IMG/VR virus record: IMGVR_UViG_3300042895_001344
Location: 62,001-126,000 of that record
Reading direction: 5' to 3' (one strand)
DNA: 64,000 bases
Shown here: piece after piece, positions 25,078 through 57,219 of the stretch
How positions within the stretch are numbered: the stretch's first letter is position 1
Layout: each line of letters begins with the position of its first letter
The notes under the pieces: model-generated
What the model was told of the DNA's origin: nothing
The model's database searches: none
Seen by the model: only the letters and a program-made list of their open reading frames with translations
Translations under genes and position numbers: made by a program

Positions 25078-26182
25078 TAGTTTTTATTTCATCAATGAAA
25101 CCATTATTAATTAATACACCTTGTATTAAATCTGATCTTAAATTAAACGCTCCGTTTGTTGATTTAAAAGATACTTTAGACCAATCGGTATTAGTAAGTA
25201 AATTAAAAATATTTTCTTTATTTTTTAATATGACAATACCATATCCAGTTTTTTTAGGTAATGATAAAAAATTATCATGTATCCTCATATTATCCTGACC
25301 AAAACAAGTCAATGGAAGATATATATCACATTTATCTAACATATTTTTATTTCTGGTTGTTGCAATTGTTCCTCCATTAGACAACGAATATAATTTTATA
25401 TAATCATTACATGTTCTACTATCTTTTTCAATTTTAAAACTCTTAGACCATATTTGAAATATGACATTAACCTTAACTTCTTTTCCATCGGGAAAATAAA
25501 AATGAGGATTAATGTTTGAACTATATATTAAATTCAACCCTTCTACTCTTGATTTAGTTGATCCCTTACCGTCGCTATCAAATAGTTGTGGCAATATAAA
25601 ACCAACAAAATCTGCGTAATTTGAATGATTTAAAAATCTTAAAGCCAAATTTGATCTTAATCCGAATGGTGGGTTACCTAAAACCAAATATTTCTTATCC
25701 GTATCGGGTGACCATTTCAAATAATCTTTAATAACAATATTTTCTAAATTACTTTCAATGTCAATACCAACTCTTCTATCTTCAGGAAATAAATTATAAA
25801 AACTACCGTCCCCAACGGATGGTTCTACATATGTGTATTCTAATTCATCTACATCATGTTCTTTTAAAACCGTTTGGAAAAGATCAAAACATAATTTGGC
25901 AGTTTCTTTTGATGTAAAGAATTGATCTTTTTCTTTTGGAGTTAATGTTGATAGATCAACAGGTATACCCAACATTTCCGATAAATCAAATTTATAATAA
26001 TTGGGTACATTATCAAGATCAATCCATCTTTTTATTGTACCGTTATTAACATTGATATATTTTGATATATGTTTTATACCCTCAATCCCTAAACTAATTT
26101 TTTCTTTTTTTGTTTGTTCTTTAGTAAAAGTAATGTTAGAGTATTTTTCAATACATTTAAATAAAATATCTAAATTATCCAT
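25070..26182 (-). CDS. N6-adenine DNA methyltransferase with N-terminal HTH
   Basis: DQFFT, EPSVGDGSF, GIDIE, GNPPFG, FILP motifs; HTH-like IKHISKYINVNNGTIKRW. Confidence 0.85.
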   Translation of the reverse strand: MDNLDILFKCIEKYSNITFTKEQTKKEKISLGIEGIKHISKYINVNNGTIKRWIDLDNVPNYYKFDLSEMLGIPVDLSTLTPKEKDQFFTSKETAKLCFDLFQTVLKEHDVDELEYTYVEPSVGDGSFYNLFPEDRRVGIDIESNLENIVIKDYLKWSPDTDKKYLVLGNPPFGLRSNLALRFLNHSNYADFVGFILPQLFDSDGKGSTKSRVEGLNLIYSSNINPHFYFPDGKEVKVNVIFQIWSKSFKIEKDSRTCNDYIKLYSLSNGGTIATTRNKNMLDKCDIYLPLTCFGQDNMRIHDNFLSLPKKTGYGIVILKNKENIFNLLTNTDWSKVSFKSTNGAFNLRSDLIQGVLINNGFIDEIKTNE

Positions 26183-33961: not shown

Positions 33962-35281
33962 TTAATCACAAGGACAAGTTACGTTTGTAAATGATGAGAA
34001 GTATATTGCTGATGGATAGTTTGTTGCCATATAAGCACTATCTTTATTCGTGTCTATTCTTGAACAACATTCACTATTTATCGTCACAAAACTTAAATTA
34101 CCCGCACTATAATCTACATAATATATTGCTGTTAAATCACATCTCTCATACACATCATATGTTTGCGGTGTAGGAGTTGGTGGTAAAGGGGTTGAAGTTG
34201 GTGGTGCTCCTGAACAAGCTGTACAAGCTGTTTGTGCTGTTCCTGTTTGTGCCGAACCATCTCTCATAAATTCTCTTTCATCCGTACCATCAGAAACCCA
34301 AAACGTGTCATTAACTATCATATCACCATATACGTTACCATACATTGTGGAAGATAAACCTTTTACTTTTGTTAAATTACATAAAGACGTACCTACAACC
34401 GTAATATTAACATTACTATATTCACCACCAGTACATGCTGTTGGTCCGTTAACTAAACTAACATAACCACTAAACGTAGTTTCAAATGGAGTTGGTTGTG
34501 GTGTTGCAGTTGCCGGTAAAGGAGTTGGTGTTGTAGGACAACTACAAGATGTTGCACTATAATTTATAAATGAAATAGTTGCACCAACTTGGGATAATGA
34601 ACCATATTGCAAACAATCGTTTATTACTTGTGGTCCAATACCAAATGTTAAATAAATTGTCTCACCGCAACAATCAATATATCTAATATCACCAGCACTA
34701 TCAACTTCAAATCCTACAGATATTACACACTCAGGTGTTGGGGTTGGGGTTACAGTTGCCGGTAATGGGGTTACAGTTGCCGGTAATGGGGTTACAGTTG
34801 CTGGTAATGGGGTTACAGTTGCTGGTAATGGGGTTACAGTTGCTGGTAATGGGGTTACTGTTGCCGGTAATGGTGTTACTGTTGGTGTATTTGTGGGAGT
34901 TGCCGTTGGTACAACTGTTGGTGTGGGAGTTGGTGTGGGAGTTGGTGTAGTCGGCATTCTTATTGTTAAATTATTATAATCAACACATTCAACACATATA
35001 ACAGGGTCACCATCTTTTCCATTAAATTCTGATGGTACCACTCTAATTGTTTTTATTCCCTCCGGAACAACTACATATGTACCATTTAAACTTGATCTTG
35101 GAATATTGGAATATCCAACTAAAGGAAAATATTTTGACGAGTCAGATCCTGAAAGGGATCCTGTACATAAAGATCCTGAATTATTAGTACAATCATCTAA
35201 ACTACCTGTACAAGCATATAAATCAACATTTAATATTGATACACCTAAAGTAAATCCTGTTAATCGTATTGTATATGACAT
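33962..35281 (-). CDS. Cys-rich modular surface protein with Pro/Thr linkers
   Basis: Cys-rich modules separated by TPTP/PLPATVT repeats; TATTTATA at 35287-35294. Confidence 0.75.
   Translation of the reverse strand: MSYTIRLTGFTLGVSILNVDLYACTGSLDDCTNNSGSLCTGSLSGSDSSKYFPLVGYSNIPRSSLNGTYVVVPEGIKTIRVVPSEFNGKDGDPVICVECVDYNNLTIRMPTTPTPTPTPTPTVVPTATPTNTPTVTPLPATVTPLPATVTPLPATVTPLPATVTPLPATVTPLPATVTPTPTPECVISVGFEVDSAGDIRYIDCCGETIYLTFGIGPQVINDCLQYGSLSQVGATISFINYSATSCSCPTTPTPLPATATPQPTPFETTFSGYVSLVNGPTACTGGEYSNVNITVVGTSLCNLTKVKGLSSTMYGNVYGDMIVNDTFWVSDGTDEREFMRDGSAQTGTAQTACTACSGAPPTSTPLPPTPTPQTYDVYERCDLTAIYYVDYSAGNLSFVTINSECCSRIDTNKDSAYMATNYPSAIYFSSFTNVTCPCD
34746..34875 (-). repeat. 21-nt tandem repeat encoding (PLPATVT) x6
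   Basis: ggggttacagttgc(c/t)ggtaat units. Confidence 0.9.
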
Positions 35282-35314
35282 ATTTCTATAAATAGTATTA
35301 TATACAATTTAAAC

Positions 35315-35342
35315 AAAAAACCCCTTAAAATAAAGGGGTTTT
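35315..35342 (-). terminator. Intrinsic terminator
   Basis: AAAAAACCCCTT-AAAATA-AAGGGGTTTT. Confidence 0.75.
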
Positions 35343-35364
35343 AATATTGTTTTGTTTTTAAATT

Positions 35365-35922
35365 TTATGTTGAGCAAACATTAATGTTCGTTACAAATCC
35401 ACTTGCTGAAATTTGTCCTGTATATGTTGCAAATCCACCGGTTCTATAATAAGCGTGATATTCATCCTCTCCACCATAACCACTTGTTAAACCAGCATCA
35501 GTAAAGAATTGTTCTACATTGGCTGCATTATTTGTTGCTGCAAATACTTCAGTTAAGGGACTTTGAGGTTCTCCACCACTACCAGTAATAGCAGCACAAG
35601 CCTGTCCAATATTCGATTGTGTAACTGATGTTCCTAATTGATATGAATATGATGTTACTACAGGTGTTGGACTCGGAGTAGGTGTTGGGGTTGCGGTTTC
35701 CGGCGGCCACGGGATTGTATTAGTACAAGTACCTGTACTTGCAATTGTTCCCCCTGTTATAGCATCATTAATACCGGTAATTGTATGACCTGTTGTTAAT
35801 TGGGCTTTTGTAATACCAGAGGCTAATTCTGATACAACGTTAGCATTTGTTGTTCCTGAAATATTAAACGGACCCGCCGAAGTTCCTGACGATCCCGATG
35901 TTAATGTAAATGTTACTGTCAT
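35365..35922 (-). CDS. Small two-domain virion protein with PT linker
   Basis: Thr/Gly-rich N-domain, TPTP linker, Cys-bounded C-module; TATTTATA at 35939-35946. Confidence 0.7.
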   Translation of the reverse strand: MTVTFTLTSGSSGTSAGPFNISGTTNANVVSELASGITKAQLTTGHTITGINDAITGGTIASTGTCTNTIPWPPETATPTPTPSPTPVVTSYSYQLGTSVTQSNIGQACAAITGSGGEPQSPLTEVFAATNNAANVEQFFTDAGLTSGYGGEDEYHAYYRTGGFATYTGQISASGFVTNINVCST

Positions 35923-35969
35923 ATTATTTGTTTCTTTTTATAAATATCTGTTTATTTTGTTTTATTTTA

Positions 35970-38900
35970 TTAAGGTGCTTCTGCACAGAATGATTTATTG
36001 GATACTATTCCGGTATACGAAATGTTTCCTGAATATGGTGTGGCTCCTACACTATTTAAAGAAAACGCATGTGTTTCGTTCTCACCAGTATAAGTAGTTA
36101 CTAAATTAGGATCTAAAAAGAATTGTTCTACATTAAATGGTTGATCTGCTGTTGCATATACTGTAGTGTAGAAATCCATACCGAAATTATCACAAGCCAT
36201 ACTCGATGATGTATAAGATGGTCCTAATTGATAAGCATATGATGTTGCAGGTGGTGGTGTATTAGTTGGTGTTGGTGTTGCCTCCTCCGGTACAGGTGTT
36301 GCTGTTGCTGGTAATGGTGTTGCGGGTATTGGTGTTGCTGTTGCTGGTAATGGTGTCGCCGTTGCCGGTACAGGTGTTGCCGTTGCAGGTAATGGCGTTG
36401 GTGTTGGACAACTTACACAACCCTCTTGTGGATAAGCTCTATTTGTTGATCCCGATTTTTGATAATATCTTGATTGTCCGAATCCTTCACTTAACCAAAA
36501 ATACCCGTTTGGATCGATTTCTGCTTGAATAATACCACCTTCTATATAACTATTTGCGTCACACATTGTTCCATAAAATCCATTAAATTGGTATGCAAAA
36601 TATGGTGTAAAACTTCCACCATTACATGCATCATAACCACTATCTAAACTAATATAAGCGGTAAACGATGTTGCAGGTATTGGTGTTGCTGTTGCTGGTA
36701 ATGGTGTCACAGTTGCTGGTAATGGTGTCACAGTTGCTGGTAATGGTGTCACAGTTGCTGGTAATGGTGTTGGTGTATTAGTTGCAGGTTGAGCACATAA
36801 TGAACTACAACTTGTAACACCTAATGCAAACATAGTTGTTAATAAAGCAATCTGTGGAGTTGTTGAATTAACGACCTGAAATATATAACCTGTTTCAGGG
36901 TCTAATCTAAACCTTGCGTTTAACACTAATTCTATATCATTAGCAATAACAATAGTTTCAACATATTCACAACTACCATTTTGTAAACATTGATATCTAT
37001 CCGCCTCATAATAGAAATTAGGGTCAGGTGTTGGTGTTACTGTTGGTACATTAGTTGGTATATTGGTTGGTATATTGGTTGGTATATTGGTTGGTACGTT
37101 AGTTGGTATATTGGTTGGTTCTGGTGTATTAGTTGGAACCGCCGTTGGTATTGCCGTTGGTACGTTAGTTGGTACATTAGTTGGTATATTGGTTGGTATA
37201 TTGGTTGGTACTGCTGTTGGTACGTTAGTTGGTAATGGTGTTGGTGTGCTGTAGATAACATCAACATCAACATTAAAGTTACAATCTGGCGTTGGAGTTG
37301 GAGTTGGTGTTGTAGTGTTAGTAGGTGTTGGGGTTGGTGTATTTGTTGCTGGTAATGGTGTAGGGGTTGGTGTATTTGTTGCGGATTCCGGTAATGGTGT
37401 TGGAGTATTTGTATTTGTTGGTGTAGGAGTTGGTGTACTATAGATAACATCAACATCAACATTAAAATTACAATCTGGTGTTGGAGTTGCGGTATTTGTT
37501 GGTGTTGGAGTTGCGGTATTTGTTGGTGTTGGAGTTGGGGTACTATAGATAACATCAACATCAACATTAAAATTACAATCTGGTGTTGGTGTAGGTGTTG
37601 CAGTGTTAGTAGGTGTAGGAGTTGGTGTACTATATACGACTAAGACATCAACATTAAAGTTACAATCTGGTGTTGGGGTTGGTGTTGCAGTGGATGTTGG
37701 GGTTGGTGTTGGGGTACTATAAAATATTTCTACGTCAACAGCAAACTCACAATTTGGTGTGGCTGTTGGGGTTGGTGTTGGAGTTGGAGTGCTAGTAACA
37801 ACTAAAACATCGACTAAGAAATTACAATTTGGTGTTGGGGTTGGAGTAGGTGTTGGGGTGCTAGTAACAACTAAAACATCGACTAAGAAATTACAATTTG
37901 GTGTTGGGGTTGGAGTAGGTGTATTTGTTGCAGGTGATGCAGTTACTGTTGGTGTTGGGGTGGAAGGTAATGGTGTTGCAGTTGCAGGTAATGGTGTTGG
38001 TGTTGGTGAAGGAGTTGTGGTAGGTGTTGCGGTTGGTGTTGGTGTGTTTGTTGGAGTTGGTGTTGGTCCTGGCTCATATATCGCTAATCCTCCACTAAAT
38101 CTACAATCTTTTACATCATTTTGACCAATTGACACATATCCATAATCTAAATAATTTTTTACTGTACAATCATTTGGGCCATATTTGTAAGACGTAAATT
38201 TAATTTTTTCACGTCCTTCATTATCTATGAAAATTTCATATGATAGTATTTTTTGTTTTGTTGTTCCCGTAATTGATGAATTACCAATTTCAGTTCCATA
38301 TTGTGTATTTTTACCTTCTCCATCTATAGTTGATCCAGAATAGGTGTTAATATATGTAATTGTATTTTGTATCGCCCTTTTCCACAATATTTTTAATTGT
38401 GTGTCGTATGATAAATCATTATAATCTACAAGATCATTAGTGGTACCTCCACTATATAAATTAATACTAACACCATCCGTTGTTATAGTATTGTCATTAT
38501 TAATTATTGTTGTTCCAGTTAATGAGGTGGCACCACTTATTAAAACATATGTACATCCCGTTACATTTGTATTCCAAGTATCTGTCTTCCAAGTACCTGT
38601 AGTTTCATAAAGACGAGTATATATTGTACCTGATGTTGGATTACTTGTATTATTGTTTGAACTTTTTAATACTCTAAAATTAATACTTTCTGAATCGTAA
38701 ATAGTATGGGTTGAACCAGATGATATAATTTCATCAAACGAATCTTTATTTAATGCAGATATATTACCTGGATCTGTCATACCAGAATAAACTTTACCGT
38801 CAATTTCAAATACCGGATAAAGTTTAACATAACCGTCAAATTTCGTTTCTCCAGATTCATCATTTTCAATACTAAATCCAAGCTCATTGTCCGCCTGTTT

Positions 38901-41333
38901 TATTAAATAACCAAAATAACTTGTATATCCTGTTGGTATTTCTAAATCAAAATTAATATGGTCTTCCGTTTCTGTAGGTTGGCATCCATATCTATATTGA
39001 TATTTTGATCTACCAAAAATATTATTTGAAATTAAATTACCTCCAGTCCATAAAGTTGTTGCAGGAATAATTTGATCAATAACACTTGTCCAATAAGGAC
39101 TCATTTTTTCAATAAACAAATTAACATCGGGAAAACTATATGGTGTGAAATCTGTATGTGATATGTAATCTTGATAGATGTCCTCTAATGTAATATAATT
39201 CTTCTTATATTTTATTAAATTAGAATTTTTAATTTGTTGATGTATCATTAAATCAACATACTCAGCAAATGTTACTCCTGTTTGTGGTGTTAAACTATTT
39301 GTACCGAATGTTGTACCTGTTGTACCAAAGTCTCTTGATTTACGATATATGTCATAATCAACCGCTTGTGCTGACGATAAATAAACTTCAATATTTTTTC
39401 TATTTAATAATAAACCAGAATTATCATTAAGATTTTCTGTTTGATTGTTATCGATAATATTTTTTAATTTATATCCTGAGTCTAATCCTGGCAATTTTCT
39501 ATAAACGTCAAAATAATCTTCACCATATGTGTATGCACTATTTTTAGTAACAATATTTTTAGTTCTTCCTGTTACCGTTGAATTATCGATATCAATCACT
39601 AATGGTGATTTATGATCTGTAGTATTATCATACCAACCAGATCCTTTTTGGAAAAAATATTCTGTTGATCCCGTAATTCCTTTAGGTAATAACGTATCTC
39701 CATTAACGGGATAATTTTCAGAATTAAATGTTGTTGTACCTGTAGTTATACCAGTATAATATCTATATGGAAGATATGTTACACCATTAATAGTTCCACC
39801 TGTTGGTAAGAATATTCCTGTTTTGTAAATTTTAGTTCCCGATATAACATCATAAATGTCACCTTTTAAATCAAATGATTTAGGTAAAGATATTACCTTG
39901 TAAACGTATTGATTAATTTTAATCATTGGTTCGGGTGCACCTAAAAATCTTAAAAAGAATTCTAAAGATTGTCTTGTACCTTTTGATTTATAAATGTAAG
40001 CCAAGTTAACTAACAACCTTCTATAAAATTCATATTCGGCATCTATTAAAGACGTTCCCGATACTAATCCAGAATATTGTTGTGATGTCTTAGTGTATAA
40101 TAATTCATCTAAACCTTTCTCATCAATTAAGTTAATTGTATCTAATCCTAAAGTATTCGCTAAATTCTTTAACAATACATCGGGTACGTTATTAATACCG
40201 TCATAACTTACATTTCTCATGTAAGCAATATTATCAATATATTTTTTTACACTATCAAAACTTTGTCCATATAATTGAAATAATGATTCGGCCTTTTTAT
40301 CGGGACTATCAAATTCAAACAATTGAGGTGATGTTAAAAACCTAACAAATAAGTTAGATTTATAATCATCAATTTCATCTGCTATGTTACTTAAATTTGT
40401 TAAATAACTATCATATTCTAAACCTGTAATTTTAATGTTCCAATCTTCCTTATCGGATAACGGCCAACTATAATTTACTGAAATTAATTCGGTTTTTGTT
40501 TCATCAAAACTATCTCTTGGAACTTTGAAACTTGAGGTGTACTTTGGAAAACTATCTCTATTTAATAAACTTTCCTCTAAATCATCTAAACCTTTAAAGA
40601 ACTCTTCAATAACACCATCATTTGGTTTAATTAATATATTTTCAGAAAACCCCGTTAAGTTACCAAATGGTTTACCACTTACCTTTAATGAAATTATATT
40701 ATCACTATTAGGTTCAATATATGAAATTACATCATAGGTTTTTCCACTTATTGAAATTAAATAATTTTTAAAAGAAGTGTAAAAATCTCTGTTTTTATTA
40801 ATTGAAGGTAATATGGTATTACTTTTCGGTGTGACCATAACAATCGAAAATGGATTGTATAGTTTACTATATTCAACTTGAAACTGAGTGGTATTACTTA
40901 TATTATCGTATGTAATATTATTAGCGGTAAAATTCGTTACTTTAATTAAACTATTAGAATCAATCAAAATAGCCGCCGGAAAATTATTAATTATATTAGT
41001 TGTCGCAACACCTAGTCTACTTTTTAATGATCCAAATAAAGATTTAGCGGCATCATTTTTAGAACCTTTAAATTTTATTTCTTTATTTTTACTTGCGGTA
41101 CCACTCGTAGTTGTACTTGAAGTTTGTCCTTTTAAATCATCTAATGTTAAAAAATTAGAAAACGGATTTGTTTTAAAATTCTTTGTATCTCTTTGTATTA
41201 CCTCACTATCTAACGCAAAGTTCGTATTAGTCAACTGACCGGTACCCGTGGTAATTTGATTACCAACTAGGTTGTCACTGAATGTATCGGCACCACTTGC
41301 AGCTTGACTTGGAATTTTACGTAATTTTGCCAT
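35970..41333 (-). CDS. 1787-aa baseplate/tail protein with mucin-like C-terminal region
   Basis: [25 protein letters not shown] resembles baseplate wedge/tail protein I motifs; C-terminal ~700 aa of PT repeats and Cys modules. Confidence 0.75.
36240..38070 (-). repeat. Pro/Thr-rich coding repeats including seven CxFxVDVxVxxS units, PTNI/V units and PLPATVT units
   Basis: Identical ~63-nt copies at 37791 and 37860; 12-nt units at 37040-37232. Confidence 0.9.
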
Positions 41334-42244
41334 TAGATATTAGTGATTGTATCAAAGTTTAAAGTTTCATCAATATCATTACGGTTTTCTCTAACCTCAT
41401 ATAGAGTTTCGTTAAAGTCGTCTTTAATTTCAAATAAGTTATATTGTTTATAGATGTTATTATCTTTATCGTAAATTGTGTAAATACCTGGAGTAACCGC
41501 CTTAGTTTGATTACCGTAAAGGGCATTTGCAAGTGTTGACGCATCATGTTCAACCATATCAATTTCGATAGTTGTTGGGTTCATATATGTATTTGATAAA
41601 ATAACCATTTGACCTGGACTACCGATAAATGGAACCGTGTTTGGTTTATTCGATGGTGCTGACGATGGTGTAATTGTTAAAAACATAAAGTTTGTTGCAC
41701 CTTCACTATATTGATATCTTACCGACTTTTGTGTTGAACTATTTAGATTCGCAGTAACAGGTGTACAATAAAAAGAAGATGTAACAATTTTATAGAAATT
41801 TGGTGTTTTTTGTTTGTTATTAGAATTTATATATTCAATCCTATATCCCACTAAACCTTGTGGTGTAAATTTATTTCTATCTTCAGACTTAACATTTGAT
41901 AAATCCAAGATTAGTCCTCTTACTGATGGTAATGATGCTAAAACACCACAATCCATAATTGTTGTTCTAATTTGTTTTGGTCTGATATGAAGTGTGTATA
42001 TTCCTAAATCGGGAAAATCTACCGCATTTAATTTAAGGTTATATAAACCTCCTAAAATTTCCACACCGCTTTCTCCACCGGTATTTCCGTTGTGTAAAAT
42101 TGGTGTTAAAACCTGATTTGGTGTTAACTTTTTTAAGGTTGTTATTGACGTCGAGATTCTATTTGGTGCATAATGATATAGAATTTCTACATCATCAGGT
42201 GATATATCCGCCGGTCTAACTATTCCATATGATCCTACTGCCAT
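41333..42244 (-). CDS. Putative virion structural protein
   Basis: 303 aa within the structural block; TATTTATA at 42255-42262. Confidence 0.65.
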
Positions 42245-42268
42245 ATTCTTTTATTATAAATATAAATC

Positions 42269-43696
42269 TTATTGTTTTTTAACTTTAAAAAATCCATTTC
42301 CATAAACATCTAACTCACTCATGTTGTCAATTTCACCCAATCTTAGGTTAACCTCCATGACACCTTGACGTCCTCTTTCCACAAAAATGTCAGAATATAC
42401 TGTTGGGTCATCTATAAAACCTAAAAAATGTTCGTTTCTTGTTAACATATGATTTATTACGTATTCTGTGTCATATTGAGTTGTGTTTCCGATTGTTGTA
42501 AGGTATGGAACGGTGTTTATTGTATTTCCCGTTATTTCATATGTGTAACCACTAGTTGGTCCAAATCTATAGTTTGGAACACTACCCGTGATCATTGTAT
42601 ATCCATCTGCTAAGTCCATATAATATAAACTTCCGCTGTCATTAGGTAAAGTGTAACCAGAGTATAGTGAACCTGAAAATAAACCTGTTGTGTAAGATGA
42701 TGTACTCACGGTACTTTCACCATATTTTCGTAATTCACCTATTCTACTAATACCTATTGCCATAAATTTAAATGGCTTGGTGGGTGTTGCAGTATATCCT
42801 GTGTTAGAATAATCATAATCATTTAAATAATTTTGATAGTTACTTCCTGTGTAATAAATGTTACCAGGTAGGGTAAAACCGGTGGAGGTTCCTAATACAT
42901 TATCTATTGTAACACCTGTTGATATTGTTATATTTTTTATTATTTTTTCTTTATTCCAAGGAGAATCTAATGATAATGTTAATGTATAACTACCCGTTGT
43001 ATTTCCCGTTACCGTTGGATATGTGTGTCCCGAATTTGGGAAATTAGAATATAATACTCCACTATTAACAGTTAACCCTGATGTATATCCATCTCCCCAA
43101 TCAATTGTAAATTCTTGATCAACAATTTTTCTTAATTTATTTGGGTTTACCGTATTATAAACCGTAACAACTGAACCTGATTGTTTATAAGTAAAATTTA
43201 TTAATTGTTCGACCTGTTCAATATTACCATCAAAGGATGACATTACACCCATTTCATCCGCACTTGCTTCAAGTGCAATTGGTACTACATATTCATAACC
43301 CGTAAATCCCGTATATAAATTCCAATTATCTCCATCCCATTTATAATATTTCCCCTTTGTATTATTAATTGCAGTTTGTTCAACTTCTTTCCAATATACA
43401 CTACCAGATGGTATGTTATTTAAATTACTACCTGTTAATGATTGATACGTTTTACCACTATAAAATAAAACAACGCTTCCTGTGTATGTAATATCGGGAT
43501 ACCATTTTATGTCACGTACCAAATGTAAACTACCTGTCTCATTTGAAGATGGTACCATACCATCTATTGGGACTGATGCGCTATACCAAGATTTCCAATC
43601 ATTTATTTCTGTATCAAACCAAAAAGTACCAGTTTCTGAATGTAAATTAACATCAGGTATTTGTCTTTTTAATATGGTATATTCGTTCTTTTTCAT
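42269..43696 (-). CDS. Virion protein with CBM5/12-like and PKD-like domains
   Basis: WYPDITY...FYSGKTYQSL...PSGSVYW; TIDWGDG...HTY...GSYTLTL. Confidence 0.65.
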   Translation of the reverse strand: MKKNEYTILKRQIPDVNLHSETGTFWFDTEINDWKSWYSASVPIDGMVPSSNETGSLHLVRDIKWYPDITYTGSVVLFYSGKTYQSLTGSNLNNIPSGSVYWKEVEQTAINNTKGKYYKWDGDNWNLYTGFTGYEYVVPIALEASADEMGVMSSFDGNIEQVEQLINFTYKQSGSVVTVYNTVNPNKLRKIVDQEFTIDWGDGYTSGLTVNSGVLYSNFPNSGHTYPTVTGNTTGSYTLTLSLDSPWNKEKIIKNITISTGVTIDNVLGTSTGFTLPGNIYYTGSNYQNYLNDYDYSNTGYTATPTKPFKFMAIGISRIGELRKYGESTVSTSSYTTGLFSGSLYSGYTLPNDSGSLYYMDLADGYTMITGSVPNYRFGPTSGYTYEITGNTINTVPYLTTIGNTTQYDTEYVINHMLTRNEHFLGFIDDPTVYSDIFVERGRQGVMEVNLRLGEIDNMSELDVYGNGFFKVKKQ

Positions 43697-43700
43697 TTTA

Positions 43701-45506
43701 TTATATTACATCAAATGTTATACTTGCATATTTTCCATTATCATATGAACTTGTTATTGTGAAATTATAAACTCCTTCACCCAATGTTACATATTGTGTA
43801 CTGTCAGGTGCTGTTAAAGCTGGCGATGTGGCATTTAAAAATATATCACCAGCAACAAAACCACTATTCGAACCACCACTTGTTGTTCCACCAAAAACAT
43901 TTAAAGTAACTTTTACACTATAACTAGCATATACTGTTAACGTTCCTACCGCATAACCATTATTAGAATATCCTGCATTTGTTGATCCTGTCACACTATA
44001 TGGTAAAGGAGTTGGTGTATTTGTTGGTGGTAAAGGAGTTGGTGTTGCGGTTATTGGTCCTGCTGTTGGGGTTTCTGTTGGTGGTAAAGGAGTTGGTGTA
44101 TTTGTTGGTGGTAAAGGAGTTGGGGTTGGGGTTGGTGCACATGATATTTCACCATAAAACACGGATGAAATTGATGCAATTACTCCTGATAATGAATTAT
44201 TTTGAATACAATCATTAATTACTTGTGGTCCAATACCAAATGTCTCGATAACTTCGGTACCCTCACAATTAAAATATCTAACAGTTCCACCAAAATCAAC
44301 ATCAAAACTTACTGACGTTACACAAGGACTTTCTGTAGGTGTTGGGGTTATTGTAGGAATTACTGTGGCCACAGGTGTAGGTGTTGAAGTTGGGAAAGGT
44401 GTTGACGTTGGTCTAGGTGTCGCCGTAACTCCACCGATAGGTGTTGGAGTTGGGGTTGATACTGGTAATAATACTCCACCTCCTTTTTCGTAGAATGTTA
44501 TACTATCAGTCGTTGTATAACCTGTGCCTATTCTACCTAACTTTGTTGTTCCCGTATATCTATATATTTGATACGTTCTTTCATAATGATCAAAATCAAT
44601 TTGATAATACATATCTTTTTCTTCTGTTATATTATAACTTGTTGTTTGACCTGAATTTATAAAATCTAATATCTCACCTCTATCCGCATTGAAAAATTTT
44701 GCCGTCATGAAAAATGTATTCATTCCATGATAAAAATTTCTATTATAGGTTATTTGATTTGGTATTGTAAATGTTTGACCTGTCCAACCAATTAACGTTG
44801 TTCCTGTTGTTGGTATATTAACTTGTGTTATTTCATTATTTTCATTTGTAAATAATATAGTTTGTATTGTAGTTCCAGTTCCAAAAACATATTGATCTAA
44901 TGTTGTTGTTCCGCTTAAATTTGTGTCGGTTAAAACACTCTCATTATCAAACCAAAACAAATACATGTTTTCTTTGTTTCGATAATTTGAACCCGTAAAA
45001 ACAGGTACATATATGTTATACCCATAGTTACTACCTGTATGAAAATATTTTTCACCTAAGGGTAATGCTAAATTTTTAGAATTTATTAATCTTCTATTTT
45101 GTCTTGTCGGTGGCTCACATGTTAAAACATAATTTGTTATACTACCAGGTGTTTTATAAAACTCTAACCTAAAAAAACTTTCAATTGACTGTTTTGTCAT
45201 CAACTGATTTTCTTGTGTTGATATACCTACAGGATTATAATCTAAAACATAATTTGGTGTATCTCCACTTGAAAAATAAAATTGAAACCATATATCTGTT
45301 TGTGACATTGTAATACCACTGGTTGTTTTATCATATGGTTTATGAATGTATCTAACTGTTTCATAATTTTTAGATGGATTAATAATATCTTTTAAAATCT
45401 CATCTTCAAAATCGGCAAGATTATCCTGCCAACCTAAATCTGTTCTAAAATTTTGTTCACTATTAACTACAATATTTAAATTGTTACTATTTTTTAAAAT
45501 TTCCAT
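43701..45506 (-). CDS. Virion structural protein with PT linkers and a Cys module
   Basis: Shares the FGIGPQVINDC module with 33962-35281. Confidence 0.7.
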   Translation of the reverse strand: MEILKNSNNLNIVVNSEQNFRTDLGWQDNLADFEDEILKDIINPSKNYETVRYIHKPYDKTTSGITMSQTDIWFQFYFSSGDTPNYVLDYNPVGISTQENQLMTKQSIESFFRLEFYKTPGSITNYVLTCEPPTRQNRRLINSKNLALPLGEKYFHTGSNYGYNIYVPVFTGSNYRNKENMYLFWFDNESVLTDTNLSGTTTLDQYVFGTGTTIQTILFTNENNEITQVNIPTTGTTLIGWTGQTFTIPNQITYNRNFYHGMNTFFMTAKFFNADRGEILDFINSGQTTSYNITEEKDMYYQIDFDHYERTYQIYRYTGTTKLGRIGTGYTTTDSITFYEKGGGVLLPVSTPTPTPIGGVTATPRPTSTPFPTSTPTPVATVIPTITPTPTESPCVTSVSFDVDFGGTVRYFNCEGTEVIETFGIGPQVINDCIQNNSLSGVIASISSVFYGEISCAPTPTPTPLPPTNTPTPLPPTETPTAGPITATPTPLPPTNTPTPLPYSVTGSTNAGYSNNGYAVGTLTVYASYSVKVTLNVFGGTTSGGSNSGFVAGDIFLNATSPALTAPDSTQYVTLGEGVYNFTITSSYDNGKYASITFDVI

Positions 45507-51066: not shown

Positions 51067-52896
51067 TTAAAATGTAGCCGTTCCTAATGTTTTAACCCTA
51101 ACTTTAATATCTTTATTTGGGAATCTAATTTGGAAGATTTGATTTGACTTCATAAAGATCATATTATCGGACTGATTTATCAATCTAGTGTTTTGATCTG
51201 TTGTTTGTGATGGTTCTGCGGATGAATATTCACCACCTATTTTACTGTAAACTCTGGTCTCAATTACATTTATCACACCTGATACACTACCTACGATTTT
51301 GTTTAAAGCACCGATAAACAAAGGATCACCCATTTTACGTTTTTCTATTGCAAAATGTTCAATTGTATCCTGAATTACCGTTTGTATAATATCTGTTTGA
51401 TTTGCGTTTTTATCTATGTTTAAATCAATTTCTAACCCCATATCGATGACTTCACCACTTACAATATCCAAATAGTCATTAATCATTTTATATTCCGTAA
51501 GATAGGTTAAAATGTTTGATTTTAATGTATATGAAACAGTATCGGTTAAATTACCTTGGTCATCGTATGATAATAATTTAATTCTAATCTTATTATCTTC
51601 CTCCATAACATTAACCTTCGCAGGTGCTCCATATGTTGATGGCATCGTTTCAATTAATGATTTATAATCATTTAATGTTACCGCTCTATTTTGTGCTGCA
51701 AAGTTATATGAAACCATATTACGAATTTCTTCGATTGTTGGTTGATCTGCACCACCTACTGCAGGTGTTATATTATTAACTCTAAGTGATTGTACCACAC
51801 CAGTATTCTTTGCTGGTACAGGTCCTGAAACTATAAATTCAACATCATCTACGTTTGTAATTACATTCACCCCTAAGTTACTATCTTTACCACCACCCAC
51901 ACGATATTGTACAAATAATGTTGTATTAATTTTTGGTGTAGTTCCTAATGATAGATTATTTAAATAACTCGCCAAATTAACTTTCAATTGTCCTGTCATA
52001 TAGTTATCCAAATTGTCTAATGGATTAACTGTACCCGAACCAAATGTTAATGAAAAATAACCTTCAGGTGTATATTCTGTTATGAATTTATTATTTACAG
52101 GTAAAAATGTTCCTGCAGTAAAATTATTTGTATCTGATACAGATGTTGGGTCTGGTACAAATACTTTGTCTTGAATTAATGATTTAACCTCATACCACTT
52201 ATTTGTGATATTAGAAAATTCATTTGATGTTGGATTACTTGTAAAAGTTGTACCGTCCTTATGAATAACAGATGTTACTCCTAATACGTTTTGTTCAGGT
52301 AAGTATAATTTTAAGAAAGGTTTTTGATCCGCTTGGTTTATAACTCTTCTATAAATTTTTGTTATACCATTTACAACTGGTTCTCTTTTTGTAATTGTAT
52401 AAGATATTAATCTATTATTTACATCAAAATTTGGTATTTTTAATCTATTAGGTTCTCCTTTTTTATTAAATGGAACCGAAAAATCAATATCATCAATTGT
52501 TTCAAAAACTTGACCTCCACCTGAAACTTGTGCTCCACTTTTTAATATACCCAAATATCTAACATCTTCTTTATCTCCTCTTACATCTACAGTAATTGAG
52601 AAATCACATAACGCTACTGATGGTCTAACACCTGGTAATCTAATACCATATGTTTTTGCGATATGATATAATGATTGTCTTTGTTGTGCAAAATCCAACA
52701 TAGTTTCCTGCCAAACTCTATCAATATGAAAATGTAAATTATCCGCAACCGCGGCATTAATATCTAATAATACCGAATAAATCGATGCGTCGTTAAAATT
52801 TTTAACTAAATCAGGATAGTAATTTTTAGTTAATGTTACTAATTCATTTCTTAATCCCTGAAAATCTCTTGTTGCGTATGATATCTGTTTACTCAT
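51067..52896 (-). CDS. Baseplate wedge subunit (T4 gp6/Baseplate-J-like)
   Basis: YATRDFQGLR, ETMLDFAQQRQS, FGSG, YRVGGG, GGAD, QNRAVTLNDY. Confidence 0.88.
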   Translation of the reverse strand: MSKQISYATRDFQGLRNELVTLTKNYYPDLVKNFNDASIYSVLLDINAAVADNLHFHIDRVWQETMLDFAQQRQSLYHIAKTYGIRLPGVRPSVALCDFSITVDVRGDKEDVRYLGILKSGAQVSGGGQVFETIDDIDFSVPFNKKGEPNRLKIPNFDVNNRLISYTITKREPVVNGITKIYRRVINQADQKPFLKLYLPEQNVLGVTSVIHKDGTTFTSNPTSNEFSNITNKWYEVKSLIQDKVFVPDPTSVSDTNNFTAGTFLPVNNKFITEYTPEGYFSLTFGSGTVNPLDNLDNYMTGQLKVNLASYLNNLSLGTTPKINTTLFVQYRVGGGKDSNLGVNVITNVDDVEFIVSGPVPAKNTGVVQSLRVNNITPAVGGADQPTIEEIRNMVSYNFAAQNRAVTLNDYKSLIETMPSTYGAPAKVNVMEEDNKIRIKLLSYDDQGNLTDTVSYTLKSNILTYLTEYKMINDYLDIVSGEVIDMGLEIDLNIDKNANQTDIIQTVIQDTIEHFAIEKRKMGDPLFIGALNKIVGSVSGVINVIETRVYSKIGGEYSSAEPSQTTDQNTRLINQSDNMIFMKSNQIFQIRFPNKDIKVRVKTLGTATF

Positions 52897-55809: not shown

Positions 55810-55842
55810 TTGTTCTTTTTTCTTTTATGTTTGTTTTATTAA

Positions 55843-57219
55843 TTACTTTCCGGCCACTTGTTGTCTCCTTTTAAATGCTTCCGCCGCTCTATTAGCATTT
55901 ATCTGAACTTTTTGTTCTTCGTGTCCCAATAATGTATTTTGAGACTCTGTATCAATAAGAAGAAACTCGTTATTGAATTTACAGTTTTGGAATACAACAC
56001 CATCTCGACCAATACGAGATTTTAATAATGTAAGAGTTGCCAAGTTATGATCTTTTTGTTCTAATGTTTTACCAATAGATAATATAACGTGTGCAATTTG
56101 TGCTTTCTTAATTGACCCACCCATTTGATCTCCAGTTACTACTTCACTTGAAATTGACTCACGGTTACCTTGTGTTGCCGTCCATATTGCCATTTCAAAT
56201 TCTCCTGTCATTGATTCTAAACTTCTCATAATAGAACCTTCACCTTTCCATTCTTCACCATTTGTAGATTTATCAGTTGATATACAATCAACATAATCTA
56301 TAACTAATAAGTCTACTTTTTTAGTTCCGTCAGAATTCATCTTTCTGATTTTATTTTTAATCTCAGAAACTGTAACATTATCACTTGCTAATTTCAATAA
56401 CTTCAAACTACCTTTAGATTTAGCTTGAGCCTCTTCTACTTTAGCCTTTACTTCTTCTTTAAATTCAGGTTGACTATCAGGTGCAATCTCAGTCCAAATC
56501 GTATAGTGTTTTCTTTTAATATTACCTGGATTGTCCTCAAAGAAAATCTGAACAACGTTATAACCTAAGTTATATGCGGTATTAGCGAACTTAGTAAGTA
56601 AGGTAGTCTTACCAGTACCTGTAGGAGCTAATACAACCCCCAATTCTCCGATCCCTAACCCACCCTTAAGTAAGTTGTCAATCCCCACAATACCTGTCGG
56701 TAATGGGTGTCTAAAGTCCTTTTCTAACGCACCGTCAATATCATGAAATACATCCGTTGCTTCATCATTTGAAATACCAACTTGTAATGCCTTTTGAATA
56801 ATTTCCTCAATTTTATTATAAGCCTCAAACTCTCCACTCTCAATAATACTCTGTACACTTTTTAACTCTCTTTTTAAGTTTTGTTGTTTACAGAAGTTAA
56901 GTGCCGTGTCTTTAACATATTCAATTTGGGAATCATTATTTTTAATTGCTTCTAATGTGTCTACGTGAATTTTAGAGGAATCTTTGTTACCGCCTTCAGC
57001 CATGATTTTCTGTGCCAATGTATTATAATCAGGGATTTTGTTGTAATTCTTATACAACTCCTTTGTATTTTCCATAATAAATCTAAAAGAGTTATTATCA
57101 AAAAACTTACTATCTAATACATCAATAATTGTTTCTCCGTACTTCTTATCTTCAATGATCGCTTTAATAAGGGATTGTTGAAACGAAAACCCCAAATACC
57201 CAAAATTCCTTTCTTCCAT
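55843..57219 (-). CDS. Replicative DNA helicase (DnaB/gp41-like)
   Basis: APTGTGKT, VIDYVD, TATQGNR, LLKSRIG. Confidence 0.92.
   Translation of the reverse strand: MEERNFGYLGFSFQQSLIKAIIEDKKYGETIIDVLDSKFFDNNSFRFIMENTKELYKNYNKIPDYNTLAQKIMAEGGNKDSSKIHVDTLEAIKNNDSQIEYVKDTALNFCKQQNLKRELKSVQSIIESGEFEAYNKIEEIIQKALQVGISNDEATDVFHDIDGALEKDFRHPLPTGIVGIDNLLKGGLGIGELGVVLAPTGTGKTTLLTKFANTAYNLGYNVVQIFFEDNPGNIKRKHYTIWTEIAPDSQPEFKEEVKAKVEEAQAKSKGSLKLLKLASDNVTVSEIKNKIRKMNSDGTKKVDLLVIDYVDCISTDKSTNGEEWKGEGSIMRSLESMTGEFEMAIWTATQGNRESISSEVVTGDQMGGSIKKAQIAHVILSIGKTLEQKDHNLATLTLLKSRIGRDGVVFQNCKFNNEFLLIDTESQNTLLGHEEQKVQINANRAAEAFKRRQQVAGK

What the first reader, a model, noticed from the sequence alone, without database searches (positions are those of the whole stretch)
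33962..45506. Shuffled library of Cys-bounded modules on mucin-like Pro/Thr stalks across four virion genes
Seen: module A (C..SV.F.VD..G..RY..C.G....TFGIGPQVINDC) at ~34560-34735 and ~44140-44330, sharing 26 identical nt. Module B (SY.YQLG.S....AC...V.A.....NVEQFF.D..L...Y.GE.E.HA...Y.G.IS..G.V.N...C) at ~35375-35655 and ~35980-36245. Module C (F..Y.SL..G..AC.GG...FW.S.G...C..C) at ~34215-34485 and ~36405-36670. All are flanked by TPTP/PLPAT repeats that are similar at the DNA level. Inference: the repeat linkers act as recombination joints for mixing probable disulfide-bonded adhesin domains on flexible, possibly O-glycosylated arms, diversifying the tail surface without a DGR.
Basis: partly seen in the sequence, partly recalled or inferred. 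Interest (0 to 1): 0.65.

Follow-up and report, generated by a model that had tools for sequence, protein, structure and literature searches.

The report
Swappable tail-protein modules on Pro/Thr linkers
A giant lake-water phage carries several genes next to its baseplate gene in which small, independently folding, cysteine-containing modules sit on proline/threonine linkers encoded by DNA repeats, and relatives show these modules being copied, swapped and lost at the linkers: a new variant of the way phages vary their surface proteins.

Summary
Modules A, B and C are each present twice in the window. By BLASTP, A is 56% identical (E 4e-16), B 39% (E 4e-11) and C 26% (E 1e-3). C is confirmed by a family alignment with four invariant Cys. 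The 26-nt identical run exists, and the linkers are imperfect tandem DNA repeats shared between genes.

The window is part of a freshwater jumbo myovirus that encodes ribosomal protein bS21 (relatives 298-336 kb; hosts predicted in the literature to be Bacteroidota). The genes lie just downstream of a T4 gp6-like baseplate wedge gene.

In about 60 related contigs, four conserved N-terminal parts carry 69 module families, and 9 families occur on more than one carrier. Phages 90-99% identical elsewhere differ in module content, and homology ends inside linkers. A fifth gene just outside the window joins a g439-type C to a g1787-type B (95% identical) through a linker resembling a third place.

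No reverse transcriptase was found, so a DGR is unlikely. AlphaFold2 models A, C, E and B as compact domains (pLDDT mostly 85-96) and the linkers as disordered. No module matches Pfam, PHROGs or a solved structure.

Shuffling at linkers is supported. Adhesin function, disulfides, glycosylation and presence in virions remain inferences. I class it as a new variant of a known kind.

The parts
51067..52896 (-). Baseplate wedge subunit (T4 gp6 / protein J-like), first gene of the co-directional block that holds the modular genes
   Evidence: PHROG phrog_219 at E 2.4e-21 and phrog_6 at E 1.2e-17. Weak PDB sequence match to a baseplate J-like protein, 9gtp, E 0.007.
44466..45506 (-). g601 conserved N-terminal part (N601, aa 1-347), the presumed virion-attached part
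   Evidence: 191 relatives in IMG/VR. For most of them the match (39-100% identity in its best segment) covers about aa 1-345 and does not extend into the C-terminal part. No Pfam, PHROG or PDB match.
44325..44465 (-). g601 linker region (aa 348-394), Pro/Thr-rich
   Evidence: Segmentation by script.
44136..44324 (-). Module A, copy 2 (g601 aa 395-457), 4 Cys
   Evidence: 55.6% identical to g439 module A, E 4e-16. Shares a 26-nt exact run with it. In the family tree it groups with the A modules of other N601 proteins.
44001..44135 (-). g601 linker (aa 458-502), a 27-nt tandem repeat; homology breakpoint against two relatives
   Evidence: TRF finds period 27, 4.7 copies. Homology to L013 (91% DNA identity) ends at 44023 and to L012 (96%) at 44065, both inside this linker.
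43704..44000 (-). Module F (g601 aa 503-601), no Cys; replaced by C-c20 or c102 in close relatives
   Evidence: Architectures of relatives.
38073..41333 (-). g1787 conserved N-terminal part (N1787, aa 1-1087)
   Evidence: Present in 36 related loci. No Pfam, PHROG or PDB match. Contains a variable stretch at about aa 785-1026 that is not bounded by Pro/Thr linkers.
37026..38072 (-). g1787 array of Pro/Thr linkers and seven 14-aa single-Cys mini-modules (aa 1088-1436)
   Evidence: Tandem repeats of 69, 87 and 105 nt. Relatives appear to carry about 5 to 13 such 12-14-aa units; this is read from the architecture strings and was not counted separately.
36789..37025 (-). Module D (g1787 aa 1437-1515), 4 Cys
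   Evidence: Cluster 13, found in 10 loci, on N1787 only.
36675..36788 (-). g1787 linker (aa 1516-1553), 21-nt tandem repeat
   Evidence: TRF finds 4.8 copies with 93% matches. Shares a 33-nt exact run with the linker on the other side of module C.
36408..36674 (-). Module C, copy 2 (g1787 aa 1554-1642), 4 invariant Cys
   Evidence: No contig in lake run X17 covers most of it at 90% identity or more (depth 0 at 36316-36617).
36249..36407 (-). g1787 linker (aa 1643-1695); homology breakpoint
   Evidence: Homology to L013 resumes at 36343, inside this linker.
35973..36248 (-). Module B, copy 2 (g1787 aa 1696-1787), 2 invariant Cys
   Evidence: It is 95% identical in protein, and 94.6% in DNA, to the B module of the fifth gene outside the window.
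35707..35922 (-). g185 N-terminal part (N185, aa 1-72), an FN3/Ig-like beta sandwich, highly conserved
   Evidence: AF2 model with mean pLDDT 85. Best PDB matches are FN3 domains at Z about 6, below the level the tool treats as telling. Many of the 378 database relatives match only this part, at about 60-80% identity, and so differ in their C-terminal part.
35662..35706 (-). g185 linker (aa 73-87); homology breakpoint
   Evidence: Homology to L009 (90%) runs 35976-35715 and stops at the boundary between N185 and the linker.
35368..35661 (-). Module B, copy 1 (g185 aa 88-185), alpha/beta, 2 invariant Cys near its two ends
   Evidence: Alignment of 49 sequences. AF2 10-residue block means of pLDDT for this part are about 82-96. 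Replaced by c21, c40 or c20 in relatives.
34955..35281 (-). g439 N-terminal part (N439, aa 1-109), Cys-rich beta domain
   Evidence: Present in 18 related loci. AF2 block means of pLDDT range from about 46 to 84, and residues 31-38, 40-43, 88-91 and 100 onward are below 50. Weak FN3-like matches at Z about 4.4.
34733..34954 (-). g439 long linker (aa 110-183), with a 21-nt unit repeated 6.7 times
   Evidence: TRF finds 96% matches. pLDDT below 50 over most of it. Summed contig depth in lake metagenomes is 6-20 times that of the neighbouring bins in three of four runs.
34538..34732 (-). Module A, copy 1 (g439 aa 184-248), small all-beta domain, 6 Cys
   Evidence: AF2 block means of pLDDT about 88-96.
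34487..34537 (-). g439 linker (aa 249-265)
34205..34486 (-). Module C, copy 1 (g439 aa 266-359), 4 invariant Cys
   Evidence: AF2 block means of pLDDT about 90-96 from residue 271. Weak matches to PilZ-type domains and FMN-binding proteins, Z about 4.5-6.5. It is 85% identical to the C module of the fifth gene.
34166..34204 (-). g439 linker (aa 360-372)
33965..34165 (-). Module E (g439 aa 373-439), 5 Cys
   Evidence: AF2 block means of pLDDT about 81-94. Cluster 15, found on N439 only.

Best explanation
These are genes of the baseplate/tail-fibre region of a freshwater jumbo myovirus that encodes ribosomal protein bS21.

Each protein has a conserved N-terminal part, which presumably fixes it to the virion. 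This is followed by one to about ten small modules of 60-100 aa (one type of only 14 aa). The modules fold independently, most contain Cys, and they are strung on disordered Pro/Thr-rich linkers.

The linkers are encoded by imperfect tandem DNA repeats whose unit lengths are multiples of three. Linkers in different genes share 17-33-nt exact runs and up to 86% identity over about 100 nt. Recombination between linkers therefore duplicates, swaps or deletes whole modules while keeping the reading frame. It can occur within one genome or between co-infecting relatives, probably through the phage's own UvsX/RecA, SbcCD and RuvC-like enzymes.

The result is a clade-wide library of at least 69 module families dealt out differently to at least five carrier genes.

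Shown: the homology of the pairs; the repeat nature of the linkers; variation in architecture among close relatives; breakpoints in linkers; a mosaic gene; within-genome paralogues at least as alike as between-genome orthologues; confident compact AF2 models of the modules.

Inferred: that the modules are outward-facing binding heads for host-surface structures; that the Cys form disulfides once the virion is in oxic water; that the linker acts as an extended spacer; and that exchange is driven by homology.
For: Homology of the pairs.

Linker DNA repeats and their similarity between genes.

Architectures among relatives:
- N601 carries A-F in the window, but A-C-c20 in L013 (91% DNA identity), A-c102 in L012 (96%), c7-A-F in L033, and c16, c7, c29, c45 or c56 elsewhere.
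- N185 carries B in the window, but c21 in L009, whose g601 is 99% identical.
- The N1787 tail is D-C-B in the window, against c21-D-c26, c21-B, c30-C-B and A-c57-C-B.
- N439 carries A-C-E in the window, against c30-C-c53.

Of 69 module clusters, 9 occur on two or more carriers.

Breakpoints: 8 of 12 internal homology ends against the three closest relatives lie within 15 nt of a linker. Linkers make up 17% of the gene length.

Module trees have two well-supported clades that mix carriers.

The fifth gene (G002 54004-56880 = L094:16004-18880, 958 aa) ends in C-linker-B. Its C is 85% identical to the g439 C but only 32% to the g1787 C. Its B is 95% identical to the g1787 B. Its linker is 79% identical in DNA to the g1787 linker at window 37027-37163. 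The same gene is present letter for letter in an independent assembly.

For module B, within-genome paralogues are 95% and 90% identical, while between-genome orthologues are 77% (g1787) and 90% (g958).

The same architectures recur in 4 to 6 assemblies with different IMG dataset numbers.

AF2 models A, C, E and B as compact domains (10-residue block means of pLDDT mostly 85-96) and the linkers below 50.

Context: a gp6-like baseplate wedge gene heads the block. Recombination genes lie in the window. There is no reverse transcriptase.

In lake run X17, depth is zero over most of modules B and C of g1787 while the flanks are covered.
Against: No module matches a known binding domain. There is no hit in Pfam or PHROGs, no PDB match at Z 8 or above, and only uncharacterised viral proteins in BFVD and the ESM Atlas.

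Module B was never searched against solved structures on its own, because N185 filled the hit lists.

There are no proteomic or expression data, so presence in the virion rests on gene order alone.

Most module copies group by carrier in the trees. Many placements are therefore old and stable, and exchange is episodic rather than frequent.

Virions assemble in the reducing cytoplasm, so disulfides could form only after release. No Erv1-type oxidase was found, although the control for that search was silent.

Exact identity between different linkers is short, 17-33 nt.

All genomes used are short-read metagenome assemblies. The run contigs laid on the window break at the linkers and do not bridge them.
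Confidence: 0.68

Rival explanations
1. The linkers are permissive boundaries, not recombination substrates. Modules move by rare illegitimate recombination or by whole-gene exchange, and selection keeps only junctions that fall in the unstructured linkers. Linker DNA is alike only because the same few codons encode Pro, Thr, Leu, Ala and Val.
For: Exact runs shared by different linkers are short: 33 nt at most, and usually 17-24 nt. Most copies of A, B and C group by carrier gene, which implies long stable periods. A junction at a module boundary is expected under any mechanism.
Against: Linker arrays in different genes are up to 86% identical over 107 nt, in the same repeat register. The B modules of two genes in one genome are more alike than the g1787 B orthologues (95% and 90% against 77%), which points to repeated homology-dependent exchange. 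The similarity of the mosaic gene to g1787 runs about 75 nt into the linker. The phage encodes UvsX/RecA, SbcCD and a RuvC-like resolvase.
Confidence: 0.2
2. The modules are not receptor-binding heads. They are decoration or structural parts: for example weak, non-specific stickiness to organic particles or slime, virion stabilisation, or spacing elements of a fibre. Their turnover is then neutral or unrelated to host range.
For: No fold or family evidence for specific binding. N185 and N439 resemble FN3/Ig-like sandwiches, a fold common in phage decoration domains. The 14-aa mini-modules look structural.
Against: The pattern of conserved N-terminal part and exchangeable C-terminal part, in genes next to a baseplate wedge gene, is the standard layout of phage receptor-binding proteins (PMC6872550). 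Module content differs between phages that are otherwise 90-99% identical, as expected for parts under host-driven selection.
Confidence: 0.25
3. The apparent shuffling is an assembly artefact. Short-read assemblers jump between strains or loci at the repetitive linkers and produce chimeric gene tails.
For: All sequences are metagenome contigs. Contigs of public runs break at every linker, and the linker bins show many alternative joints with short sides and inflated depth.
Against: The window's architecture, linker lengths included, is identical in contigs from three other IMG datasets, and the L013-type architecture recurs in four datasets. The exact g439 protein is on record from 10 contigs. 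The mosaic fifth gene is identical in two assemblies. Gene order and reading frames are intact in all loci. Exact repeats between different linkers (33 nt or less) are shorter than the k-mers normally used for final contigs (the k-mer remark is my own knowledge).
Confidence: 0.07
4. The conserved Cys bind metal, for example structural zinc, rather than forming disulfides.
For: Virions assemble in the reducing cytoplasm. Module C ends in a Cys-x-x-Cys motif and has four invariant Cys. Modules A and E end in Cys-x-Cys.
Against: Cys counts per module family are mostly even: 41 even, 19 odd and 9 with none among 69 clusters. In module A, all 4-Cys sequences lack, and all 6-Cys sequences have, the same two extra Cys, as if a pair were gained or lost together. 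In module B, the two invariant Cys lie near its two ends, as for a clasp closing a domain. None of this is decisive.
Confidence: 0.25

Closest known systems
Mosaic distal tail-fibre adhesins of T-even phages (gp37/gp38), in which conserved motifs flank variable segments (Tetart et al. 1998, J Mol Biol; cited from my own knowledge, not read here)
   Same: Short conserved sequence motifs flank variable segments of tail proteins, and recombination between those motifs swaps the segments. The phage is a T4-type myovirus with its own recombination enzymes.
   Different: Here the joints are long, disordered Pro/Thr linkers encoded by tandem repeats, not short motifs inside a folded fibre. What is swapped are whole, independently folding 60-100-aa domains strung like beads. 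At least five genes draw on the same pool. No sequence similarity to gp37 or gp38 was found.
[quoted passage not shown]
   Same: Low-complexity repeats separate distinct domains of the host-recognition protein, and the variable region between them determines host range.
   Different: Those repeats are collagen-like Gly-X-Y, the phages are siphoviruses of a Gram-positive host, and one gene is involved. Here the repeats are Pro/Thr-rich, the phage is a jumbo myovirus, several genes take part, and the modules are unrelated.
Carbohydrate-binding modules that decorate Dit, tail-tube, neck-passage and other proteins of lactococcal 936 phages (PMC6669499; related work PMC7533335)
   Same: Several virion proteins of one phage carry extra small binding modules appended to conserved structural parts, and the set of modules differs between related phages.
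   Different: Those modules have recognisable CBM folds (BppA-like) found by HHpred, and binding was shown. The modules here match no CBM or other known fold, and no binding has been tested.
Receptor-binding proteins with a conserved N-terminal anchor and an exchangeable C-terminal part, as modelled for Klebsiella phages (PMC6872550)
   Same: Conserved N-terminal part and variable C-terminal part; several such proteins per virion.
   Different: Those proteins carry a single large trimeric depolymerase domain. Here there are strings of small modules on flexible linkers, with no enzymatic domain detected.
Pro/Thr linkers joining catalytic domains and carbohydrate-binding modules in bacterial cellulases and xylanases (my own knowledge)
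   Same: Pro/Thr-rich extended linkers between independently folding modules. Modules are shuffled between genes. The linkers are O-glycosylated in some bacteria.
   Different: Those are secreted enzymes of cells. Here the proteins belong to a phage, are made in the cytoplasm, have no catalytic domain, and have no recognisable CBM.
Diversity-generating retroelements (DGRs) of phages
   Same: The outcome is the same: variation of a tail-protein surface.
   Different: The mechanism differs. No reverse transcriptase was found in the genome or in a complete relative. Variation here comes from exchange of whole modules, not from targeted mutagenesis.

Membership tests
bS21-encoding freshwater jumbo myoviruses (Chen et al. 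2022, PMC9723584) | Genome of about 293-331 kb with GC about 31-34%, from freshwater | tested here: met
   Relatives of 298-336 kb. G002 has GC 31.6%. The sequence is held by lake-water metagenomes from more than 17 studies. The paper's figures were read.
bS21-encoding freshwater jumbo myoviruses (Chen et al. 2022, PMC9723584) | Encodes ribosomal protein bS21 | tested here: met
   PF01165 scores above its cut-off in G002, which contains the window at 100% identity, and in the complete relative G001. The gene lies outside the window.
bS21-encoding freshwater jumbo myoviruses (Chen et al. 2022, PMC9723584) | Falls in the paper's TerL clade | not tested
   No terminase phylogeny was made.
Phage receptor-binding / tail-fibre proteins with an exchangeable distal part | Encoded in the tail/baseplate gene block | tested here: met
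   A gp6-like baseplate wedge gene at 51067-52896 heads the co-directional block. The genes between it and the modular genes have no family match.
Phage receptor-binding / tail-fibre proteins with an exchangeable distal part | Conserved N-terminal part and variable C-terminal part among relatives | tested here: met
Phage receptor-binding / tail-fibre proteins with an exchangeable distal part | Present in the virion and binds a host receptor | not testable with these tools
   Needs virion proteomics and binding assays.
Cassette exchange at flanking repeats (T-even conserved motifs; S. thermophilus collagen-like repeats) | Repeated DNA motifs flank the variable segments | tested here: met
Cassette exchange at flanking repeats (T-even conserved motifs; S. 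thermophilus collagen-like repeats) | Junctions between differing relatives fall in the repeats | tested here: met
   8 of 12 homology ends against the three closest relatives lie within 15 nt of a linker. The junctions of the mosaic fifth gene lie inside linkers. Selection for tolerated junctions would give the same picture.
Cassette exchange at flanking repeats (T-even conserved motifs; S. thermophilus collagen-like repeats) | A swap changes host specificity | not testable with these tools
   No isolate and no known host.
Diversity-generating retroelement | Reverse transcriptase with a template/variable repeat pair | tested here: not met
   No PF00078 match in G000, G001 (100% complete) or G002. 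The control genomes did respond.
Carbohydrate-binding modules (CAZy CBM families) on Pro/Thr linkers | Module belongs to a known CBM family by sequence or fold | tested here: not met
   No Pfam hit for the window's proteins or for 8 other carriers. No PDB match at Z 8 or above for N185, A, C, E or N439. Module B was not tested on its own.
Carbohydrate-binding modules (CAZy CBM families) on Pro/Thr linkers | Pro/Thr-rich linker between modules | tested here: met
   The linkers are modelled as disordered.
Ig-like / FN3 domains on phage structural proteins | Beta-sandwich of Ig/FN3 topology | tested here: inconclusive
   N185 matches FN3 domains at Z 5.5-6.4 over 71-81 residues, and N439 at Z about 4.4. 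By the tool's own note, Z below 8 may reflect only a common arrangement. There is no Pfam hit.
Mucin-like O-glycosylated stalk | Pro/Thr-rich, disordered composition | tested here: met
Mucin-like O-glycosylated stalk | Carries O-glycans | not testable with these tools
   GT2 glycosyltransferase genes are present: 1 in G002, and 6 matches in G001, 5 of them above the family cut-off. Their substrate is unknown.
Disulfide-bonded extracellular modules | Conserved Cys, even in number | tested here: met
   Module B has 2 invariant Cys, C has 4, and A has 4 or 6. Of 69 module clusters, 41 have an even non-zero median Cys count.
Disulfide-bonded extracellular modules | Cys pairs actually bonded | not testable with these tools
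Mass spectrometry or an experimental structure is needed.

The most novel reading that the evidence does not exclude
Freshwater bS21-type jumbo phages run a combinatorial surface-protein system. Tandem-repeat-encoded Pro/Thr linkers would act as in-frame recombination joints shared by five or more baseplate-region genes. Dozens of small, previously undescribed Cys-stabilised binding domains could then be dealt out, duplicated and homogenised within and between genomes. This would be a recombination-based functional counterpart of DGRs and of bacterial antigenic-variation cassettes, and it would set host range in a major group of lake phages.
Probability: 0.35. Interest if true: 0.72.

Novelty: new variant of a known kind. 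Interest (0 to 1): 0.55.

Why it matters
Host recognition by the abundant large phages of lake Bacteroidota is unknown, and none of these proteins has an annotation.

If the modules are binding heads, this locus gives three things:
- a catalogue of roughly 70 new small domain families to test;
- a natural example of in-frame domain exchange guided by repeat-encoded linkers, which could serve as a template for building phage-derived binding proteins with new specificities;
- a marker region for following phage-host co-evolution in lake time series.

It also carries a practical warning. Short-read assemblies break or may mis-join at these linkers, so strain-level conclusions about such genes need long reads.

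Tried and rejected
- Pfam and PHROGs on nine proteins of the block gave no hit. Pfam on eight other carriers of module C gave only one marginal tail-collar hit.
- GenBank phages: no DNA match, and no tblastn match for g439 or g601.
- Foldseek against the PDB gave nothing at E 0.001 or better for either model.
- VIA-align gave only middling matches, all below the level the tool's notes treat as meaningful: FN3 for N185 at Z about 6; PilZ-type domains and FMN-binding proteins for C at Z about 4.5-6.5; small beta sandwiches for A at Z about 4.
- BFVD and the ESM Atlas returned only uncharacterised viral proteins.
I make no claim that its fold is new.
- hhalign among N185, N439, A-F, c20, c21 and c26 found no pair at probability 50% or more. 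I therefore dropped the idea that N185 and N439 are one anchor family, and that D and E are related.
- PDB sequence searches for N1787, g1205 and N601 were empty.
- The Erv1/ALR sulfhydryl oxidase search was empty, but its control was silent too, so it says nothing.
- Laying run contigs on the window (501 letters) gave no bridging pieces across linkers. The many joints it listed have sides of 20-33 nt and may come from other sequences, so I did not count them as recombinants.
No genetic code other than table 11 was used.

Full report
WHAT THE WINDOW IS

All genes lie on the - strand, and GC is about 30%. The window belongs to an IMG/VR virus record of 69,970 bp that CheckV rates 21% complete. 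It is 100% identical to positions 62001-126000 of a 217-kb record, G002.

Relatives include records of 298-336 kb. G002 and a complete 335.6-kb relative (G001) encode ribosomal protein bS21. Size, GC (31.6% for G002) and habitat (lake-water metagenomes) match the bS21-encoding freshwater jumbo myoviruses of Chen et al. 2022. That paper predicts Bacteroidetes hosts, with one CRISPR spacer from a Flavobacterium (PMC9723584).

The window also holds a T4-like replication and recombination set:
- UvsX/RecA, a DnaB-type helicase, SSB and primase;
- SbcC, SbcD and a RuvC-like resolvase;
- ribonucleotide reductase and a sigma factor.

It holds a prohead protease and two collagen-repeat proteins as well.

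The four ORFs are g439 (33962-35281), g185 (35365-35922), g1787 (35970-41333) and g601 (43701-45506). BLASTP among the window's own proteins gives:

| Module | Identity | E-value |
|---|---|---|
| A | 55.6% | 4e-16 |
| B | 38.9% | 4e-11 |
| C | 25.8% | 1e-3 |

The weak C pair is secured by a 14-sequence alignment with four invariant Cys and invariant Ser, Arg and Gly. A profile built from that alignment finds 126 clusters among 1.84 billion representatives.

The 26-nt identical run is exact: 34623-34648 = 44218-44243.

The linkers are imperfect tandem repeats with units of 6 to 36 nt, all multiples of three. One 21-nt unit is repeated 6.7 times at 96% matches. Arrays in different genes are up to 86% identical over 107 nt. 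Exact runs shared by different linkers are 17-33 nt. The longest is shared by the two linkers on either side of module C in g1787.

Further modules are D, E, F and seven copies of a 14-aa single-Cys unit in g1787.

WHAT THE PROTEINS LOOK LIKE

AlphaFold2 with family alignments gave a g185 model with mean pLDDT 85. It has an N-terminal beta sandwich and an alpha/beta module B. In the g439 model, modules A, C and E have 10-residue block means of pLDDT mostly between 85 and 96, and every linker is below 50.

N185 resembles FN3 domains (Z about 6, 71-81 residues). C weakly resembles PilZ-type domains and FMN-binding proteins (Z about 4.5-6.5). A weakly resembles small beta sandwiches (Z about 4). 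All of these are below the level the tool's notes treat as telling.

Foldseek against the PDB found nothing at E 0.001 or better. BFVD and the ESM Atlas gave only uncharacterised viral proteins. Pfam and PHROGs are silent. Module B was not tested alone.

The modules are not detectably related to one another.

Cys are conserved and mostly even in number:
- two in B, near its two ends;
- four in C;
- four in A, or six in a subtype where the same two extra Cys are always present together;
- an even non-zero median count in 41 of 69 module clusters.

This suggests disulfides but does not exclude metal sites.

WHERE THE GENES SIT

The gene at 51067-52896 matches baseplate wedge families of the T4 gp6 type (phrog_219 at 2e-21, phrog_6 at 1e-17). 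It also weakly matches a solved baseplate J-like protein.

It heads a co-directional block: g1205, g624, g601, g475, g303, g1787, g185, g439. The block is syntenic in all relatives examined. Location in the virion is therefore inferred from gene order only.

THE COMPARATIVE TEST

The N-terminal 345 residues of g601 have 191 relatives in IMG/VR. Identity in the best segment is 39-100%. For most relatives the match does not extend into the C-terminal part.

I cut all ORFs of about 85 loci at their Pro/Thr linkers and clustered the pieces. Four conserved N-terminal parts emerged: N601 in 60 loci, N1787 in 36, N439 in 18 and N185 in 16. Together they carry 69 module clusters, and 9 clusters occur on two or more carriers (A, B, C, c11, c16, c20, c21, c30, c53).

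Architectures differ even between near relatives (DNA identities):

| Carrier | In the window | In relatives |
|---|---|---|
| N601 | A-F | A-C-c20 (L013, 91% DNA identity); A-c102 (L012, 96%); c7-A-F (L033) |
| N185 | B | c21 (L009, whose g601 is 99% identical) |
| N1787 tail | D-C-B | c21-D-c26; c21-B; c30-C-B; A-c57-C-B |
| N439 | A-C-E | c30-C-c53 |

Linker lengths differ between close relatives, and the architecture strings show differing numbers of mini-module units.

BREAKPOINTS

- Against L013, homology in g601 ends at 44023, inside the linker 44001-44135. In g1787 it resumes at 36343, inside the linker 36249-36407.
- Against L009, homology in g185 stops at the boundary between N185 and the linker.
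- Over the three closest relatives, 8 of 12 internal homology ends lie within 15 nt of a linker, although linkers make up 17% of the gene length.
- The other four ends mark a variable stretch in the N-terminal part of g1787 that is not bounded by linkers.

EXCHANGE WITHIN THE GENOME

Scanning the whole of G002 showed a fifth multi-module gene at G002 54004-56880 (L094:16004-18880). It encodes 958 aa with seven linkers and 17 Cys. A neighbouring 610-aa protein shares its 81-aa N-terminal part.

The 958-aa protein ends in C-linker-B:
- Its C is 85% identical to the g439 C but only 32% to the g1787 C.
- Its B is 95% identical to the g1787 B (94.6% in DNA).
- The linker between them is 79% identical in DNA to a third place, the g1787 linker at 37027-37163.

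The junctions lie inside linker sequence. The gene is identical in an independent assembly.

In the L013-type genome its orthologue has different internal modules, including c21, but keeps the C-B tail.

For module B, the within-genome copies in g958 and g1787 are 95% and 90% identical. The between-genome orthologues are 77% (g1787) and 90% (g958). That pattern fits repeated homogenisation or re-copying within each lineage.

Module trees show two well-supported clades that mix carriers, although most copies group by carrier. Exchange is therefore episodic.

ARTEFACT CHECK

All data are short-read assemblies, and contigs of public runs break at each linker. Four points speak against chimeras:
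- The window's architecture is identical in three other IMG datasets, and the L013-type architecture recurs in four.
- The exact g439 protein is on record from 10 contigs.
- Frames and gene order are intact everywhere.
- Exact inter-linker repeats are 33 nt or shorter.

In run X17, depth is zero over most of modules B and C of g1787 while neighbouring parts are covered. This agrees with real strain differences. Long reads remain the decisive check.

MECHANISM AND ITS LIMITS

The best-supported account is recombination between repeat-encoded linkers. These linkers keep the reading frame and tolerate any length. The phage's own recombination enzymes probably carry out the exchange. The result is that whole folded modules are duplicated, swapped and deleted among several genes of the baseplate region.

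No reverse transcriptase is present, so this variation is not made by a DGR.

Four points are inference:
- That the modules bind host-surface structures. This rests on the classic layout of conserved N-terminal part and variable distal part (PMC6872550) and on analogy with module-decorated lactococcal phages (PMC6669499).
- That the Cys form disulfides.
- That the proteins are in the virion.
- That the linkers are glycosylated, which is open. GT2 genes exist in the clade, but their substrates are unknown.

COMPARISON AND NOVELTY

Exchange of adhesin segments at flanking conserved motifs is known from T-even phages (my own knowledge). In S. thermophilus phages, collagen-like repeats separate domains of the antireceptor (PMC5601072).

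New here are:
- the kind of joint: long, disordered Pro/Thr linkers encoded by tandem repeats;
- the beads-on-a-string layout of small Cys-containing domains;
- the sharing of one module pool by five or more genes;
- the module families themselves, which no library describes;
- the phage group.

Four of my six full-text searches looked for a prior description of such a linker-and-module layout in phages; none turned one up.

I rate it a new variant of a known kind, of moderate interest.

Noticed in passing
G002 54004-56880 (= L094:16004-18880), about 5-8 kb beyond the window's low-coordinate end: A fifth multi-module gene: 958 aa, seven Pro/Thr linkers, 17 Cys. Its tail joins a g439-type module C to a g1787-type module B (95% identical). 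The neighbouring 610-aa protein (G002 56956-58788) shares its 81-aa N-terminal part and is mostly linker.
   Followed up: yes
window 37245-37898 (g1787 aa 1146-1363): Seven copies of a 14-aa unit with one Cys and alternating hydrophobic residues, each separated by 9-49 aa of Pro/Thr linker. Relatives appear to carry about 5 to 13 such units (read from the architecture strings). The unit looks like a repeated single beta strand, and one Cys per unit might cross-link chains. Its role is unknown.
   Followed up: partly
window 1081-6309 and 6312-8012: Two large proteins (1742 and 566 aa) with long collagen triple-helix repeats (Pfam PF01391, E 1e-62 and 5e-30). They are probably further fibrous virion parts, and they lie between the modular block and the fifth modular gene.
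   Followed up: no
window about 38256-38979 (g1787 aa about 785-1026) and 42269-43696 (g475): Stretches where otherwise 90-96% identical relatives drop to below 80% DNA identity or lose similarity altogether, without Pro/Thr linkers at the borders. This is a second, different kind of variable region in the same block.
   Followed up: partly
G002 182937-183083 (outside the window); G001 122185-122331: A ribosomal protein bS21 gene. It places this phage in the bS21-encoding lake phage group described in PMC9723584.
   Followed up: yes
window 34806-34956, 37222-37372, 37977-38127: In the lake-run contigs laid on the window, most linker bins have 5-100 times the summed depth of the neighbouring module bins. 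The same Pro/Thr-coding words must therefore occur in many other sequences in these lakes.
   Followed up: partly
window 19314-20123; 10640-11653; 25070-26182; 22022-22699: A phage sigma factor, two DNA methyltransferase-like genes and a prohead protease lie among the replication genes (PHROG hits).
   Followed up: no
G001 (complete relative) and G002 168696-169130: GT2 glycosyltransferase genes: six matches in the complete relative (five above the family cut-off) and one in G002. Their targets are unknown. They could bear on virion or DNA modification.
   Followed up: no
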